From positions 22,382,001 to 22,446,000 of the forward strand of contig NC_135759.1 of the NCBI RefSeq assembly GCF_052425735.1: a stretch of DNA of 64,000 nucleotides. Reading direction: 5' to 3'. Positions 47,468 through 52,091 of the stretch are shown one piece after another. Origin of the DNA: Oculina patagonica (lineage: Eukaryota). Both the position numbers and the translations under genes were made by a program. Positions within the stretch are counted from its first letter, which is position 1. Every line of letters starts with the position of its first letter. The notes under the pieces were generated by a model. That model was not told where the DNA came from. It saw only the letters and a program-made list of their open reading frames with translations, and did not search any database.

Positions 47468-50400
47468 TCAGCTGTGCTTATTACCGCGTAAAAACATGCG
47501 CATCCTCTTGAACCAACGAGCACGTTGCGTATTACTGAGTGAATGGTGACTATTAGCTGTGCTTGAGTGTTCTGCTCCAAGCAGATTCCGCCTGATGTCA
47601 ATCGCATGCTGTTTAGACTCATCAGCCGAAGTAAAGTCGCCTTGTGCATGTTGAGTGTCCCCGAGTGAATCGTAACAATCAGCTGTGCTTGAGTGTTCTT
47701 CTCCAAGCAGTTTCCTTACGATGTCAAGTGCACGCTGTTTAGACTGATTAGCTAAAGCGAGGTCGCCCTGTTCGTGTTGTATGATCCCCAGTAAATAGTA
47801 ACTGTCAGCTGTGCTTGAGTGTTCTTCTCCAAACAGTTTACGCCTGATGTCAAGCGCACGCTGTATAGACTGAATGGCTGAGGATAAGTCGCCTTGTGCA
47901 TGTTGTGTGGCCCCAAGCAAAAAGTAACTTTTGGCTGTTTTTGAGTGTTCTTGTCCAAACATCTCCAGTCTGATCTCAAGGGAACGCTGTTCAGCCTTGA
48001 GAGCTTCTGAATAGTTTTTCAACTTGTATTGAAAGTAGGCGTGGTCAAACAAGCAATTTGCTCGCAGTTCACGGTGAAGCGCATACCCGGTTTCGAAGAT
48101 ATTTTGTAATTGTTCGATTGCCTTCTCATGGTAGGTGTTATTTGCCGACGACAAATTAGCTGCCTCTTCAGGTTCGCCTAACACATTCTGTACTATTCTA
48201 GTGACGTTACGCTGGAAATTAAAAAACCCAAGTGAACTTTGTAGGAGCGGTTTTTCTATTTCTTCTACAATTTTTAGCACAGCGTTGCTTACAGATTGCT
48301 TTGTGTCAGTTTCGGGTAAATGTTTTGTTGCTTTGCTCACAAGGCAAAGAATTTCTAATGTTAGTGGAGAATTGTTTAAGGTGTCAGGGTCTCTTTGGAC
48401 CATTTCTCCTGCAATTTCCTCTCCTCTGTTTTCTATTGCAGGAATAATTAGTAGTTGTGGGTCTCCCACTGTTTTGCATTCCTGAAGTGCCTTGCCGTAG
48501 AACATTGACATTCTTGACGTGTTCTTTTTCAAGCGATAATAAGTGGCAAGGATCTGGAAAGCAGTAATTCTAAGAATCCTCTGCTCGGGGGTGCCATTCA
48601 TTAAGGAAAGAGCCTCTTCTAAGCATTGAACTCCTTCCTCTGTTTTGCCGGTAACTAGTTGATAGATGCCGCTACAACACAAGTGTTTCCCTTTATCACC
48701 AAAGGACACTGATGAACAGGACGCTTCACTCTTCTTTGCTTCTGAGAGCAGCGGCATTGTTCTACCTCGAGCACCCAAAGGTACTTCAGTTAAAGCCAAG
48801 GACACAAGTAACTGTCTGAAGAACACATTTTGCCCATCCGTCTTGGCTGCTGCAATTGCTGAATCGTAGATTTTGCCAATGTTTTCTCCCTCGCACCAAA
48901 ATAAGCTGTCCAGGAACAGTTCTGCTTTTGTCAAAGCACGAAAAACAGCGGCAGATGTCTTGCAATCTAAACAACCCTCTATTAGACTTTGAAGATAACT
49001 CTGCCTATCTTCATAGAATTCAATAAACGCCGTCATTGAATTTCCTGTTAAGAACTGCTCATTTAGCTTCTCGAATCGGGAGACGTAAAATGCACACAAG
49101 CGAGATTTAGCGTTGAGAACAGTTTCTTTTATCTCTTGTTCTCCCCTCTCGCCTGCAAACGACAGAAGTAGCTGATGCATTACGAATGACCCAGACTTAG
49201 AACTTGAATCGAGAAAAGATTTCCTTCGCAGGCTATGTAATACCTTCTTTGCCACAGGCATTTGTGATATACCCAGAACGGCTGCAGCAACCGTTATATC
49301 GAAACTCTCTGGAAGAACAGTCAAGGATACAAGAGCTTCCTTTTCTTGAGTAGCGAGCCTCTGAAAAGAAGAGTCAAATAAGTGTTTCAATCTCAGATTG
49401 GAGGGATAGTCTGGATTGTCTAAAATATCGACAATATTGTTACTTTCTAAAGACCTCATAAAGTCATCCATGACTTGACTCGGTTGAAGATCATCTTCAG
49501 AAATGGAGGAACACAATAACTTTATGGCCAAAGGTACTTGCCCGCATACTTGCGTAATTCGTATGCAGTCGGAAGGAGTCGCATTTGGGAGTAATTCTTT
49601 AATAAGGTTTTGAGAATAGGATTCATCTAATGGTCGTATTCTTACTGCATGGTGGCCTTGGAATTGCACATTCATAAACTCCAGGGATTCTCTAGTGGTA
49701 ATAACGAATGTCACCTTTTTGGTTCGTCTGAGTATTTCTTCAAGAAAATGCGTGAAATCCTCCTTCACTTTTGGCATTCCACTTTCGAATAACTCATCAG
49801 CATTATCAAGAATCAAAACAAAGCGATCCGAAATTTCGCTCAAAAGTTGGAAAAGCTCATCGTCAAGCGAAAGACGCCCAGGTTGTCGATCATTTGTGGT
49901 AGGTCGTCTGAAAAAGCTAAGAAGCTTTGATGTCAGATCGGCTTTAGATTGAACTCCTCGTAACGAGAGAAAGTAGACGGGCAATCCCTGAGAGTGAAGA
50001 TGATGTCCTACTGCAGTTGCTACGGACGTTTTTCCAAAACCTGGTGAGCCCCAGATCGACACGATTCGGATAGATTCGGAAGTCACGTGACCAGTGATCT
50101 CATCACATTCTCCCTGGCGGCCAGTAAAGTGTGGAACCGTTGGAGGAAGACAGGTTCTTGGGAGTGATGTCTTTGTATCTTTGAAAAGGCAAAATAAAAA
50201 CAATAATCATGGAAGGTATGTTTCAATATAAATCTTTTTTGCCTGTAAAAACTGGATATCTGGTGACGTCACGAGAAATGGTAATATGGCCGCCGAAGCT
50301 AGGCACACTATACATACTCTTTTTTGAGCTCTTTTTGTGGCCAAAAAGCGGACTTTTCACACAAGGTTTTTTCACACAATACAATAGAACAATATAGATT

Positions 50401-51426
50401 TGTTGAGTGGAGAAGAAAATGGCGTTTTGCGAAGCTTTCACGAGTTGCGAGGCCGAAACCTTACCAGTGAGCCAATCAGATTACTGGAAATCATATATCC
50501 AGTTCTGGTTATGAGCCGAACTGCTTAACAATCACTGAACTGTACTGAGTTCAAATTTTGTTTTGCAAATTAAGTATTATCTTCAGAAACAAGTGTTACA
50601 CGGTACATAAATTCCAGTATATACCTGACTCTTCTTGTAACAGTGCCTCTTTCAAATCATTGATCTTTTGCTCTAACATCATGGCGATGTCTTCTTTACT
50701 TGCAGTGCCTTCCACTTTTCCTTTTATTGCAGTTGACAACACTCTTAACTCGTCGATATCTGAATTTACGCCCTCGAGAAACTTGATATATGCCCGGGTC
50801 TCCTCTTTAATACCTTGTTCCAATTTGCGAACTTCTTTTGTGGGGAAGTCTGACTCAGTCAAACCACCAATGACATCAATAGGGTCTGTCTTGACTCCAA
50901 AAGCTTTGAATGCATCTTTAGCATGTTGTACGTATTGGTCAAATGTTGGTTTGTCAATCTCAGAACTGGATGAGTGGCAAAGCGAATTTCGTAACAGTCG
51001 AAGTTGATCAATCGCAAGTGCAAATGTTTCGGCCTTGTTTCCACCCGGACTCGCCACAGATGCATGGAACCTTCCAAGAGGTAATTTATGGGGCTTCACG
51101 TACAGATCATTGAGTGTCCTGTGATGACCTGTGCTGTCAGGCAAAGCGAAGGACCGCGCGTAAATAGTGGCTTGGAACAGGGCGGTACAATCCCATTCAT
51201 CATAGGAGAGGTGTGTGGGAACTTTAGTTTTCCCACCCTCTGCAGCGAGAAACAGATTTCTCACCACAATGGAGTCATCCCAGGGCTGGAAGGCAGGGAA
51301 ATGTCCAAAGTTGTTGTCCCACATGGATCTGAAAGTTTGACGTAAGGCTTTGGGAAATTCATTGAGTGCAATGGAAGCAAACTTGAAATAGTTCAACTGC
51401 TCGTCCTGAAACGGCTGCAGGGCCAT
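47468..51426 (-). CDS. NLR-like STAND protein: N-terminal HEPN-like domain, coiled coil, NB-ARC/AAA NTPase, TPR repeats (~1170 aa, 2 coding exons)
   Basis: Exon 51426-50625 (phase 1) splices to 50178-47468. Motifs: WDCTALF and LRLLRNSLCH (RxxxxH); FTGR; Walker A GSPGFGKT; Walker B LILDNAD; VITTR; CGQVPLAI; MHQLL; 42-aa TPRs (EHSSTADSY..LG..QH.QGD). Confidence 0.85.
47520..47955 (-). repeat. 126-bp coding tandem repeat (about 3.5 TPR units)
   Basis: cagctgtgcttgagtgttct recurs at 126-nt spacing. Confidence 0.85.
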
Positions 51427-51772
51427 CTTTCTTTAGCAGCAATTGTCAGCAATTATCATTGGACCTCCTGGACATTACCGACAACCTGAGAAACCTAAGA
51501 CAAGATACCTTGAATGTTGCATTGAATTGCTTAATAGTGACAAGGAAGTATTGGTAAAAAGGAATACTAAGCCTGGACTTTGATTTATTGATAAACAATG
51601 TAAAAAGGTACGGGTTCAGTCATCGTTTGATATTAGACAAAATGAAATCCGCTAAACTGCAACTAGAAAACAAACTGTGTCACGTTGCTTTATAACGTGA
51701 GGGTAAATTTGAAATGAGAAACTTTTGAGTGAGGCTGACATCGCCTACAGACCACTTTCGTGACTTTGCTAA

Positions 51773-52091
51773 GGCCTACTCTGGGACCCAAAGTAGCCGT
51801 AACTTTGGGCGACTTAAGGCGACTTTAGGCGATTTTAGCTTATTTTGTCCAAAATTACGGGCGATTTTGGGCGATTTAAGGCGATTTTGGGCGACTTTAG
51901 GCGATTTTGAGCGACGTTAGGCAATTTTAGGTGACCTTTTAGGCAATTTTAGGTGACCGACCTAAGTACAGTTGTGGTATACATGTACATGGGAATCATC
52001 ATGGTTCACCATAAAGCATTGTTACAGAAAATATCTGCGACTTTGGGCGACTTTAGGCGATTTGGGGCGATTTTGGGTCCCAGAGTAGGCC
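51773..52091. mobile_element. MITE with 10-bp ggcgatttt(a/g) internal repeats
   Basis: Perfect 20-bp TIR GGCCTACTCTGGGACCCAAA. Confidence 0.8.

What the first reader, a model, noticed from the sequence alone, without database searches (positions are those of the whole stretch)
47468..51426. NLR-like receptor with a putative HEPN ribonuclease effector (HEPN-STAND-TPR)
Seen: two ORFs that the track lists separately splice into one ~1170-aa protein. It has an N-terminal helical domain with an intact RNSLCH (RxxxxH) motif, a coiled coil, a complete STAND NTPase and C-terminal TPRs. Established: RxxxxH is the HEPN RNase catalytic motif (RNase L/Ire1 KEN, Cas13, toxins) and is usually activated by dimerisation; effector-STAND-TPR is the layout of bacterial Avs and fungal NLR immune proteins. 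Inference: a ligand-triggered, oligomerisation-activated RNase acting in animal innate immunity or cell death. The effector sits on its own exon, consistent with modular swapping. The architecture probably recurs in related genomes, but I know of no functional characterisation.
Basis: partly seen in the sequence, partly recalled or inferred. Interest (0 to 1): 0.8.

Follow-up and report, generated by a model that had tools for sequence, protein, structure and literature searches.

The report
Coral HEPN-STAND-TPR receptor-like gene
This is an intact, spliced stony-coral gene that joins a predicted RNA-cutting HEPN domain to a nucleotide-driven switch and a TPR repeat sensor; it belongs to a large class of invertebrate "HEPN-NLR" genes that is already catalogued but has never been tested at the bench.

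Summary
Two minus-strand ORFs (51426-50625 and 50178-47468) join through a GT..AG intron of 446 nt, in frame, to give 1170 aa. The exact junction appears in assembled contigs of three public runs, and the genome holds no copy of the joined form.

The first ~195 aa fold with high confidence (pLDDT 93) into a four-helix HEPN fold. The nearest structural and profile relatives are DZIP3/hRUL138-like HEPN domains. RNSLCH sits at the end of helix 3, where the HEPN active site lies, and is kept in 92-98% of family members. Next come a helical hairpin, a STAND NTPase (Walker A, Walker B, TTR, GxPLA) and 42-aa TPR units.

The domain is a divergent subfamily that scores below Pfam's cut-off. This genome holds about 48 such exons, and about 30 are followed by the cognate STAND exon. 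It also holds at least 150 canonical DZIP3-HEPN domains.

HEPN-NACHT/TPR proteins of cnidarians and molluscs are described in several papers, and none of those I found and read reports a biochemical test. The sensor-activated RNase model is therefore plausible but inferred.

The scan has flagged the same architecture on other DNA of this genome (s1-278841, s1-294015, s1-286770, s1-310731). Verdict: a real gene and a new member of a known kind, of modest interest.

The parts
50625..51426 (-). Exon 1: start codon at 51426; codes aa 1-267 plus the first base of codon 268 (HEPN domain and helical hairpin)
   Evidence: ORF and in-frame upstream stop; contigs cover it
50842..51426 (-). Divergent DZIP3-like HEPN domain, aa 1-195
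   Evidence: AF2 pLDDT 92.9; Foldseek hits to DZIP3-like HEPN entries; hhalign prob 95%, E 2e-8; HEPN chains among the top VIA hits
50974..50991 (-). RNSLCH, the Rx4H motif (aa 146-151), at the end of helix 131-150
   Evidence: conservation; position matches the description in PMC3710099
51064..51069 (-). Conserved Phe-His (aa 120-121) in the insert between HEPN helices 2 and 3
   Evidence: 42/42 in A1; 118/119 and 80/89 in larger sets; role not tested
50626..50841 (-). Helical hairpin / coiled-coil linker, aa 196-267
   Evidence: AF2 helices 196-237 and 242-273; matched only by coiled coils
50179..50624 (-). Intron, 446 nt, GT..AG, phase 1; holds a dispersed repeat at about 50250-50466
47468..50178 (-). 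Exon 2: aa 268-1170 and the stop codon (47468-47470)
   Evidence: contigs run on past the stop into the 3' flank
49487..50113 (-). STAND NTPase (NACHT 40.7 bits, NB-ARC 25.8 bits). Walker A GSPGFGKT at 50027-50050, Walker B VLILDNAD at 49796-49819, TTR at aa 425-430, GxPLA at 49526-49543
47981..48580 (-). Least conserved stretch between paralogues (aa 801-1000, 45-54% identity against 92-93% in the HEPN domain); candidate specificity region
47543..48064 (-). TPR array (TPR_12/TPR_10, kinesin-light-chain-like), including three 126-nt tandem units at 47538-47997

Best explanation
A functional two-exon gene of a scleractinian coral encodes a 1170-aa NLR-like protein. It has a divergent DZIP3/hRUL138-like HEPN domain (aa 1-195), a helical hairpin (196-267), a STAND NTPase of the NACHT/NB-ARC kind (about 290-510), a variable helical region and a TPR array (about 980-1150).

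Shown: the gene structure and splicing, the HEPN fold and its kinship, the intact and conserved R-N-x3-H motif at the end of helix 3, purifying selection on the HEPN domain, the complete NTPase motifs, and membership of a family of about 30-48 copies in this genome.

Inferred by analogy with Apaf-1/NLR/Avs STAND proteins and with RNase L, Ire1, Csm6 and Cas13 HEPN RNases: the TPR/variable region binds a trigger, nucleotide-dependent oligomerisation of the STAND module brings HEPN domains together, and paired HEPN domains form a metal-independent RNase site. That site would cut viral or host RNA and so give an antiviral or cell-suicide response.
For: Splicing and frame.
HEPN fold: the AF2 model has pLDDT 92.9 and pTM 0.88. 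AlphaFold-DB cluster hits named DZIP3-like HEPN have prob 1.00 and TM 0.5-0.6. Mouse and human DZIP3, residues 384-586, give prob 0.98 and 0.82. The top solved match is the Csm6 HEPN domain (Z 6.6), and AbiF, Cas13, AF_0298, sacsin, LsoA and Swt1 HEPN chains are also in the top 50.
Profile-profile comparison with canonical PF18738 exons of this genome gives prob 95% and E 2e-8, and places R-N-H on R-N-H. 22 of 42 family members hit PF18738.
Motif conservation: R146 119/119 and 86/89, N147 119/119 and 84/89, H151 117/119 and 82/89; 20/20 nearest paralogues keep it.
dN/dS of the HEPN domain is 0.11-0.25.
STAND and TPR.
The HEPN exon is paired with the cognate STAND exon at about 30 loci.
The class is described, and predicted to be RNases or RNA sensors in immunity, in PMC3710099, PMC8260672, PMC10236652, PMC9646362 and PMC8662601.
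Against: No RNase activity, ligand, oligomer or immune phenotype is known for any animal DZIP3-like HEPN-STAND protein in the papers I found and read.
The single sequence is below Pfam's gathering score (19.5 < 27 bits).
Structural matches to solved HEPN chains are all Z < 8, a range where helical bundles can match by chance. Foldseek against the PDB found nothing.
The homodimer prediction gave no verdict.
Human DZIP3, as I recall, is known as an RNA-binding E3 ligase and not as an RNase.
The runs that show the junction are only guessed to be RNA, and a poly-A raw-read run laid only 9 reads.
Confidence: 0.6

Rival explanations
1. The HEPN domain does not cut RNA. It binds or senses RNA, or recruits other proteins, and the protein signals through partners, much as human DZIP3 is (from my recollection) an RNA-binding ubiquitin ligase.
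For: The nearest named relative is DZIP3. PMC8662601 suggests HEPN-NLRs may be cytoplasmic RNA sensors. A sister family on contig C11 keeps R-N but has lost the His in the copy I read, so HEPN-like domains without a full site persist in this genome.
Against: R, N and H are all kept in 92-98% of members under purifying selection. PMC3710099 takes this as the mark of active HEPN RNases.
Confidence: 0.22
2. The protein is not an immune receptor. It is a housekeeping or scaffolding STAND-TPR protein (NPHP3- or TTC28-like), and its expansion reflects something other than host-pathogen conflict.
For: The TPRs resemble kinesin light chain and NPHP3 TPRs. A relative is named 'tetratricopeptide repeat protein 28-like'.
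Against: The family is expanded by lineage into tens of copies. The C-terminal region is variable (45-54% identity) beside a conserved N-domain (92-93%). Relatives are fused to the IIGP GTPase and the CHAT protease. Together these are the pattern of conflict genes (Kaur et al.).
Confidence: 0.1
3. This copy is a decaying or silent duplicate, and the junction contigs come from close paralogues or alleles.
For: Several exon-2 contigs differ from the window by 3-4%. Some paralogues carry stops. Almost no reads were laid from one poly-A library.
Against: The 1170-codon frame is uninterrupted and all motifs are intact. The junction contig in X1 is 99.3% identical over exon 1. dN/dS is well below 1.
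Confidence: 0.06

Closest known systems
DZIP3/hRUL138-like HEPN-NACHT (HEPN-NLR) proteins of cnidarians and molluscs (Anantharaman 2013, PMC3710099; Emery 2021, PMC8260672; Noel 2023, PMC10236652; Takeuchi 2022, PMC9646362)
   Same: N-terminal DZIP3-like HEPN domain with R-N-x-H, a central STAND NTPase, C-terminal TPRs, large lineage-specific expansions, and a predicted RNase or RNA-sensing role in immunity.
   Different: This HEPN domain belongs to a divergent subfamily that falls below Pfam PF18738's cut-off, so domain-count surveys probably miss it. It has Rx4H rather than the Rx5H of this genome's canonical copies, a long first helix, a larger helix-2/3 insert with a conserved Phe-His, and a helical hairpin before the NTPase.
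Human/mouse DZIP3 (hRUL138)
   Same: Best Swiss-Prot structural match: the HEPN region 384-586, prob 0.98/0.82.
   Different: In my recollection DZIP3 is a RING E3 ligase. It has no STAND module, and sequence identity is only about 12%.
Bacterial Avs and bNACHT STAND defence proteins
   Same: An effector - STAND - repeat-sensor layout. HEPN RNase domains are listed among bacterial NACHT effectors.
   Different: This is a eukaryotic, intron-containing gene. I made no test of direct descent, and the HEPN subfamily is an animal one. The trigger is unknown.
RNase L / Ire1 KEN domains, Csm6/Csx1, Cas13
   Same: A HEPN fold with Rx4-6H at the end of helix 3. Csm6 is the top solved structural match (Z 6.6).
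   Different: The activating modules differ (kinase-like/ankyrin, CARF, crRNA), and here the pairing would be driven by a STAND oligomer. This is inferred only.
Apaf-1 / NB-ARC and NPHP3-type STAND-TPR proteins
   Same: P-loop, hhhhD, TTR and GxPLA motifs, and kinesin-light-chain-like TPR_12 repeats.
   Different: No CARD, WD40 or LRR, and a HEPN domain at the effector position.

Membership tests
HEPN superfamily | Four-helix up-down core with an insert between helices 2 and 3 | tested here: met
   The AF2 model (pLDDT 92.9) has helices 8-40, 80-87, an insert, 131-150 and 159-176. HEPN chains (Csm6, AbiF, Cas13, AF_0298, sacsin, LsoA, Swt1) are among the top 50 VIA matches, though all at Z < 8. 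DZIP3-like HEPN models give prob 1.00.
HEPN superfamily | Rx4-6H motif at the end of helix 3, with a polar residue (N/D/H) after R | tested here: met
   R146-N147-S-L-C-H151 lies at the end of helix 131-150. It is conserved in 92-98% of members. The definition is from PMC3710099.
HEPN superfamily | Metal-independent RNase activity dependent on R and H | not testable with these tools
   Needs a biochemical assay.
Pfam HEPN_DZIP3 (PF18738) | Score at or above the gathering threshold (27 bits) | tested here: not met
   19.5 bits, E 9e-4, covering only aa 137-183. 22 of 42 relatives hit at E <= 0.01, best 6e-5.
Pfam HEPN_DZIP3 (PF18738) | Profile-level homology to canonical members | tested here: met
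   hhalign against 20 canonical PF18738 exons of this genome gives prob 94.8-95.4% and E 2-5e-8. With a permissive setting the alignment spans the whole domain and lines up WD.T.L, the aromatic-P-[DN]-E loop and RN..H.
STAND NTPase (NACHT / NB-ARC) | Walker A, Walker B, sensor TTR and GxP motifs; Pfam score over the cut-off | tested here: met
   NACHT 40.7 bits (cut-off 26.7) and NB-ARC 25.8 bits (cut-off 23.5). GSPGFGKT, VLILDNAD, FVITTR and GQVPLA are present.
Canonical animal NLR (NACHT-LRR) | C-terminal leucine-rich repeats | tested here: not met
   No LRR match; TPR_12 at 8.8e-31 instead. It is NLR-like by layout only.
Bacterial Avs | Prokaryotic STAND protein that senses a conserved phage protein and defends against phage | not tested
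   This is an animal gene with an intron. The analogy is one of layout only, and no phylogeny of the STAND module was made.

The most novel reading that the evidence does not exclude
This divergent HEPN subfamily is the enzymatic death or antiviral effector of an animal STAND receptor. On this reading, oligomerisation pairs the HEPN domains into an active RNase. The conserved His121, from the helix-2/3 insert, might contribute a second histidine to the site, as has been proposed for AbiV and AF0298-type HEPN domains. If so, it would be a biochemically tractable example of an animal NLR-like protein that carries its own nuclease, as bacterial Avs proteins do.
Probability: 0.35. Interest if true: 0.7.

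Novelty: new member of a known kind. Interest (0 to 1): 0.28.

Why it matters
HEPN-NLRs are among the commonest NLR-like architectures in corals and bivalves, yet none of the papers I found and read reports what they sense or whether the HEPN domain cuts RNA. This gene is a clean, intact, spliced example. It has a confidently modelled effector domain and a defined set of residues to mutate. It also shows that a whole subfamily (about 48 exons here, 288 clusters at 50% identity in public data) lies below Pfam's cut-off, so published counts of HEPN-NLRs in corals are probably too low. It does not change what is thought about these proteins.

Tried and rejected
- Foldseek against the PDB, with the 276-aa and the 200-aa models, found nothing at E <= 0.001.
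- VIA-align with the 276-aa model was swamped by coiled-coil matches to aa 196-276, so I refolded the globular part alone.
- A profile search of PDB sequences with the N-domain family gave only insignificant coiled-coil matches. NCBIfam had nothing for exon 1.
- Complex prediction for a homodimer of aa 1-200 scored 0.04 against a mark of 0.32. The tool's verdict is 'no answer', so I count it neither for nor against dimerisation.
- The raw poly-A reads of X22 laid only 9 reads, which is too few to judge expression or transcript ends.
- One STAND-exon paralogue (C13:8794267-8795460) seemed to lack the HEPN exon, which could have been a case of exon swapping. The upstream stretch is a run of N, so nothing can be said, and I did not try to fill it. 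The 'ORF' listed there lies in the Ns and is an artefact.
- I rejected the retrocopy explanation of the joint, because the joined 32-mer is absent from the assembly.
- I rejected frequent effector swapping within the subfamily, because HEPN-exon and STAND-exon identities co-vary across about 30 loci.
Full report
**The observation**

The window is part of contig C2 of a 529-Mb genome. Named relatives come from Orbicella, Stylophora and Montipora. A paralogue is annotated in Oculina patagonica on a contig whose length equals that of this genome's C12. The organism is therefore a scleractinian coral.

Two minus-strand ORFs are present as described: 50596..51426 (276 aa) and 47468..50203 (911 aa). 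The ATG at 51426 has an in-frame TAA two codons upstream. A GT follows 50625 and a pyrimidine tract plus AG precedes 50178. Joining 51426-50625 to 50178-47468 gives 3513 nt, 1170 codons and one terminal stop.

**Is the junction used?**

Read laying placed contigs of three public runs from three studies on the locus. Each run has one contig with a joint 50178<->50625 that skips exactly 446 nt, with GT..AG ends on the coding strand. The X1 contig differs from the window at 3 of 406 exon-1 positions.

- In X3 the intron bins have depth 1-5 against 15-20 in the exons.
- The intron signal in X1 and X4 is one 200-nt piece with 12 mismatches at a different depth, which points to a dispersed repeat.
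- The runs are only guessed to be RNA. However, the joined 32-mer is absent from the whole assembly at up to 3 mismatches, so a genomic retrocopy does not explain the joint.
- Independently, an NCBI gene model for the C12 paralogue (P0278, 1172 aa) aligns to the spliced product at 72% identity over 1159 aa and crosses the junction without a gap.
- Contigs continue collinearly past the stop codon, so I see no sign of a further coding exon.

**The N-terminal domain**

Pfam gives a single sub-threshold hit, HEPN_DZIP3 (PF18738), at 19.5 bits against a cut-off of 27, over aa 137-183. An exhaustive search found 288 clusters at 50% identity with E <= 1e-3, and the word-indexed search found 1876 clusters at 90% identity.

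With a 42-sequence alignment, AlphaFold2 gave pLDDT 91.3 for the 276-aa ORF and 92.9 (pTM 0.88) for aa 1-200. The model has helices 8-40, 53-62 and 80-87, an insert, helices 131-150 and 159-176, and then a long hairpin 196-273.

- Foldseek against AlphaFold-DB clusters returned two coral relatives, then a long list of entries named 'DZIP3-like HEPN domain-containing protein' or 'E3 ubiquitin-protein ligase DZIP3', with probability 1.00 and TM 0.5-0.6.
- In Swiss-Prot the only matches with high probability were mouse and human DZIP3, residues 384-586 (prob 0.98 and 0.82).
- Against about 48,000 solved chains the best match was the HEPN domain of Csm6 (4rgp, Z 6.6, 114 residues, rmsd 3.7). AbiF, two Cas13-type chains, AF_0298, sacsin, LsoA, Swt1 and a Thermus HEPN protein were also in the top 50. 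Each of these Z values is in the range where helical bundles match by chance. The recurrence of one superfamily is what counts.
- Foldseek against the PDB found nothing.

For a sequence-level test I took 20 canonical PF18738 exons from this same genome and compared profiles. hhalign gave probability 94.8-95.4% and E 2-5e-8, and aligned R146-N147...H151 to the canonical R-N-x4-H. With a permissive setting the alignment spans the whole canonical domain. It also lines up the [FW]-D-x-T-x-L motif of helix 2 and the aromatic...P...[DN]...E loop.

The motif lies at the end of helix 131-150 and the start of the following loop. This is where Anantharaman et al. place the Rx4-6H motif, and the Asn after Arg is the typical polar residue.

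I conclude that the domain is a divergent member of the DZIP3-like HEPN group. It fails Pfam's own threshold, which I record as a failed formal test.

**Conservation**

- In 119 clusters at 90% identity that cover the site, R146 and N147 are invariant and H151 is kept in 117.
- In 89 representatives at 50% identity, R is kept in 86, N in 84 and H in 82.
- All 20 nearest paralogues in this genome keep DQ[LI]RLLRNxxCH.
- Pairwise dN/dS of the HEPN domain against six paralogues is 0.11-0.25.
- A Phe-His pair at 120-121, in the helix-2/3 insert, is about as conserved as H151. Its role is untested. PMC3710099 notes that in some HEPN families a histidine from this insert may serve the active site.

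**The rest of the protein**

Exon 2 matches NACHT (2.9e-10), NB-ARC (7.8e-6), TPR_12 (8.8e-31) and TPR_10 (3.9e-18). It has GSPGFGKT, VLILDNAD, FVITTR and GQVPLA. The last two are, from my knowledge of the family, typical of the NB-ARC/Apaf-1 branch.

The TPRs resemble kinesin light chain and include three 126-nt tandem units. Against the C12 paralogue, identity is 92-93% in the HEPN domain, 74-84% in the NTPase and 45-54% at aa 801-1000. This is the pattern expected for a conserved effector joined to a diversifying sensor.

**The family in this genome**

The HEPN exon has about 48 strong matches, in clusters on C13, C5, C9, C4, C1, C7 and C14. The first 400 aa of exon 2 have a matching set. 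By coordinates, about 30 HEPN exons are followed within 0.2-3 kb, on the same strand, by the cognate STAND exon. The two identities fall together (90/86, 87/78, 68/60 and 55/44 %). A few copies carry stops.

The two exons have therefore been duplicated as a unit, and I see no swapping within the subfamily. This locus is a lone copy on C2.

Several lie in the same open frame as, or just upstream of, a STAND module 25-30% identical to this one, so the HEPN-STAND union predates the split of the subfamilies.

In other anthozoans the same N-domain is found in gene models with TPRs only, with an IIGP GTPase (Dendronephthya) and with TPR plus CHAT. This shows shuffling over longer times, if those models are right.

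**What is known**

- Anantharaman et al. 2013 list DZIP3/hRUL138 HEPN domains fused to TPR, NACHT, Death and LRR, with expansions in Nematostella and oyster.
- Emery et al. 2021 found this HEPN to be the commonest non-LRR partner of NACHT in many cnidarians.
- Noel et al. 2023 note many N-terminal DZIP3-like HEPN domains in coral NLRs, and that NB-ARC goes with TPRs.
- Takeuchi et al. 2022 describe more than 50 HEPN-NACHT genes in a pearl oyster, with Rx4H the commonest motif.
- Tassia et al. 2021 call them HEPN-NLRs and state that molecular studies are needed.
- Kibby et al. list HEPN among the effectors of bacterial NACHT proteins.

None of these papers reports a biochemical or genetic test of an animal HEPN-STAND protein. 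The scan itself has flagged the same architecture at four other places in this genome. One was followed up with the same conclusion.

**Mechanism**

The steps shown are the architecture, the fold, the motif, the selection and the splicing. The steps inferred are:

1. The variable region and TPRs bind a trigger.
2. The STAND module exchanges nucleotide and oligomerises.
3. HEPN domains are brought into pairs through the hairpin linker.
4. The paired Rx4H motifs cut RNA.

The inference rests on STAND proteins (Apaf-1, NLRs, Avs) and on HEPN RNases that need pairing (RNase L, Ire1, Csm6, Cas13). For the behaviour of those systems I rely on my own knowledge; PMC3710099 covers only the catalytic role of R and H. 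A homodimer prediction gave no verdict.

The main rival is a non-catalytic role in RNA binding or as an adaptor. Neither can be settled without an assay.

**Verdict**

This is a real, intact, spliced gene. It is one of many copies of a class already catalogued, so I rate it a new member of a known kind, of modest interest. Its value lies mainly in being a clean candidate for the first biochemical test, and in showing that a subfamily escapes Pfam-based counts.

Noticed in passing
window 51684-52235 (direct repeats 51787-52085): About 260 nt upstream of the start codon lies an array of 10-nt units (GGGCGAyTTT-like). It has very high summed contig depth in all three runs (500-11,000 against 10-30 in the gene), and many contigs break at 51771/51772. 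It is probably a widespread satellite or the end of a transposable element.
   Followed up: partly
window 50250-50466 (inside the intron): A roughly 200-nt piece is matched by contigs with 12 mismatches and a depth unlike that of the exons. I take it to be a dispersed repeat inside the intron.
   Followed up: no
L041 747-4490 (G000:C11:8401300-8406300) and the C11 8.0-8.7 Mb cluster: A sister family of single-exon genes (1247 aa in the copy I read). Its N-domain is 24% identical to this one over the whole domain. It lacks the 34-aa insert with the Phe-His pair and keeps R-N, but has no His at the motif. A weak P-loop match and 12 TPR_12 units follow. The HEPN domain may be inactive.
   Followed up: partly
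Large tandem arrays lie on C8 (26.6-27.1, 29.5-30.6 and 11.0-11.3 Mb) and C9 (12.4-13.5 Mb). Many are separate exons of about 240 aa, and others lie inside open frames of about 1500 aa.
   Followed up: partly
P0154 and P0161 (Dendronephthya gigantea gene models): The same N-terminal domain subfamily is joined to an interferon-inducible-GTPase (IIGP) domain in one octocoral protein, and to TPRs plus a CHAT protease domain in another.
   Followed up: partly
L042 about 3530-3900 (G000:C13:8792500-8798500): A run of N lies just upstream of the STAND exon of a 79%-identical paralogue, where its HEPN exon would be expected. The ORF listing reports spurious ORFs inside it. I left it unfilled.
   Followed up: no
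window 24289-25032 (+): An open frame of 247 aa with five C2H2 zinc fingers (zf-C2H2 3e-32).
   Followed up: no
window 12136-12951 (-): An open frame with a GDSL/SGNH lipase-like match (1.3e-7, at the Pfam cut-off). The scan has noted it separately (s1-271074).
   Followed up: no
window 54295-55164 (+): A 289-aa ATG-initiated open frame 3 kb upstream of the gene, with no Pfam match.
   Followed up: no
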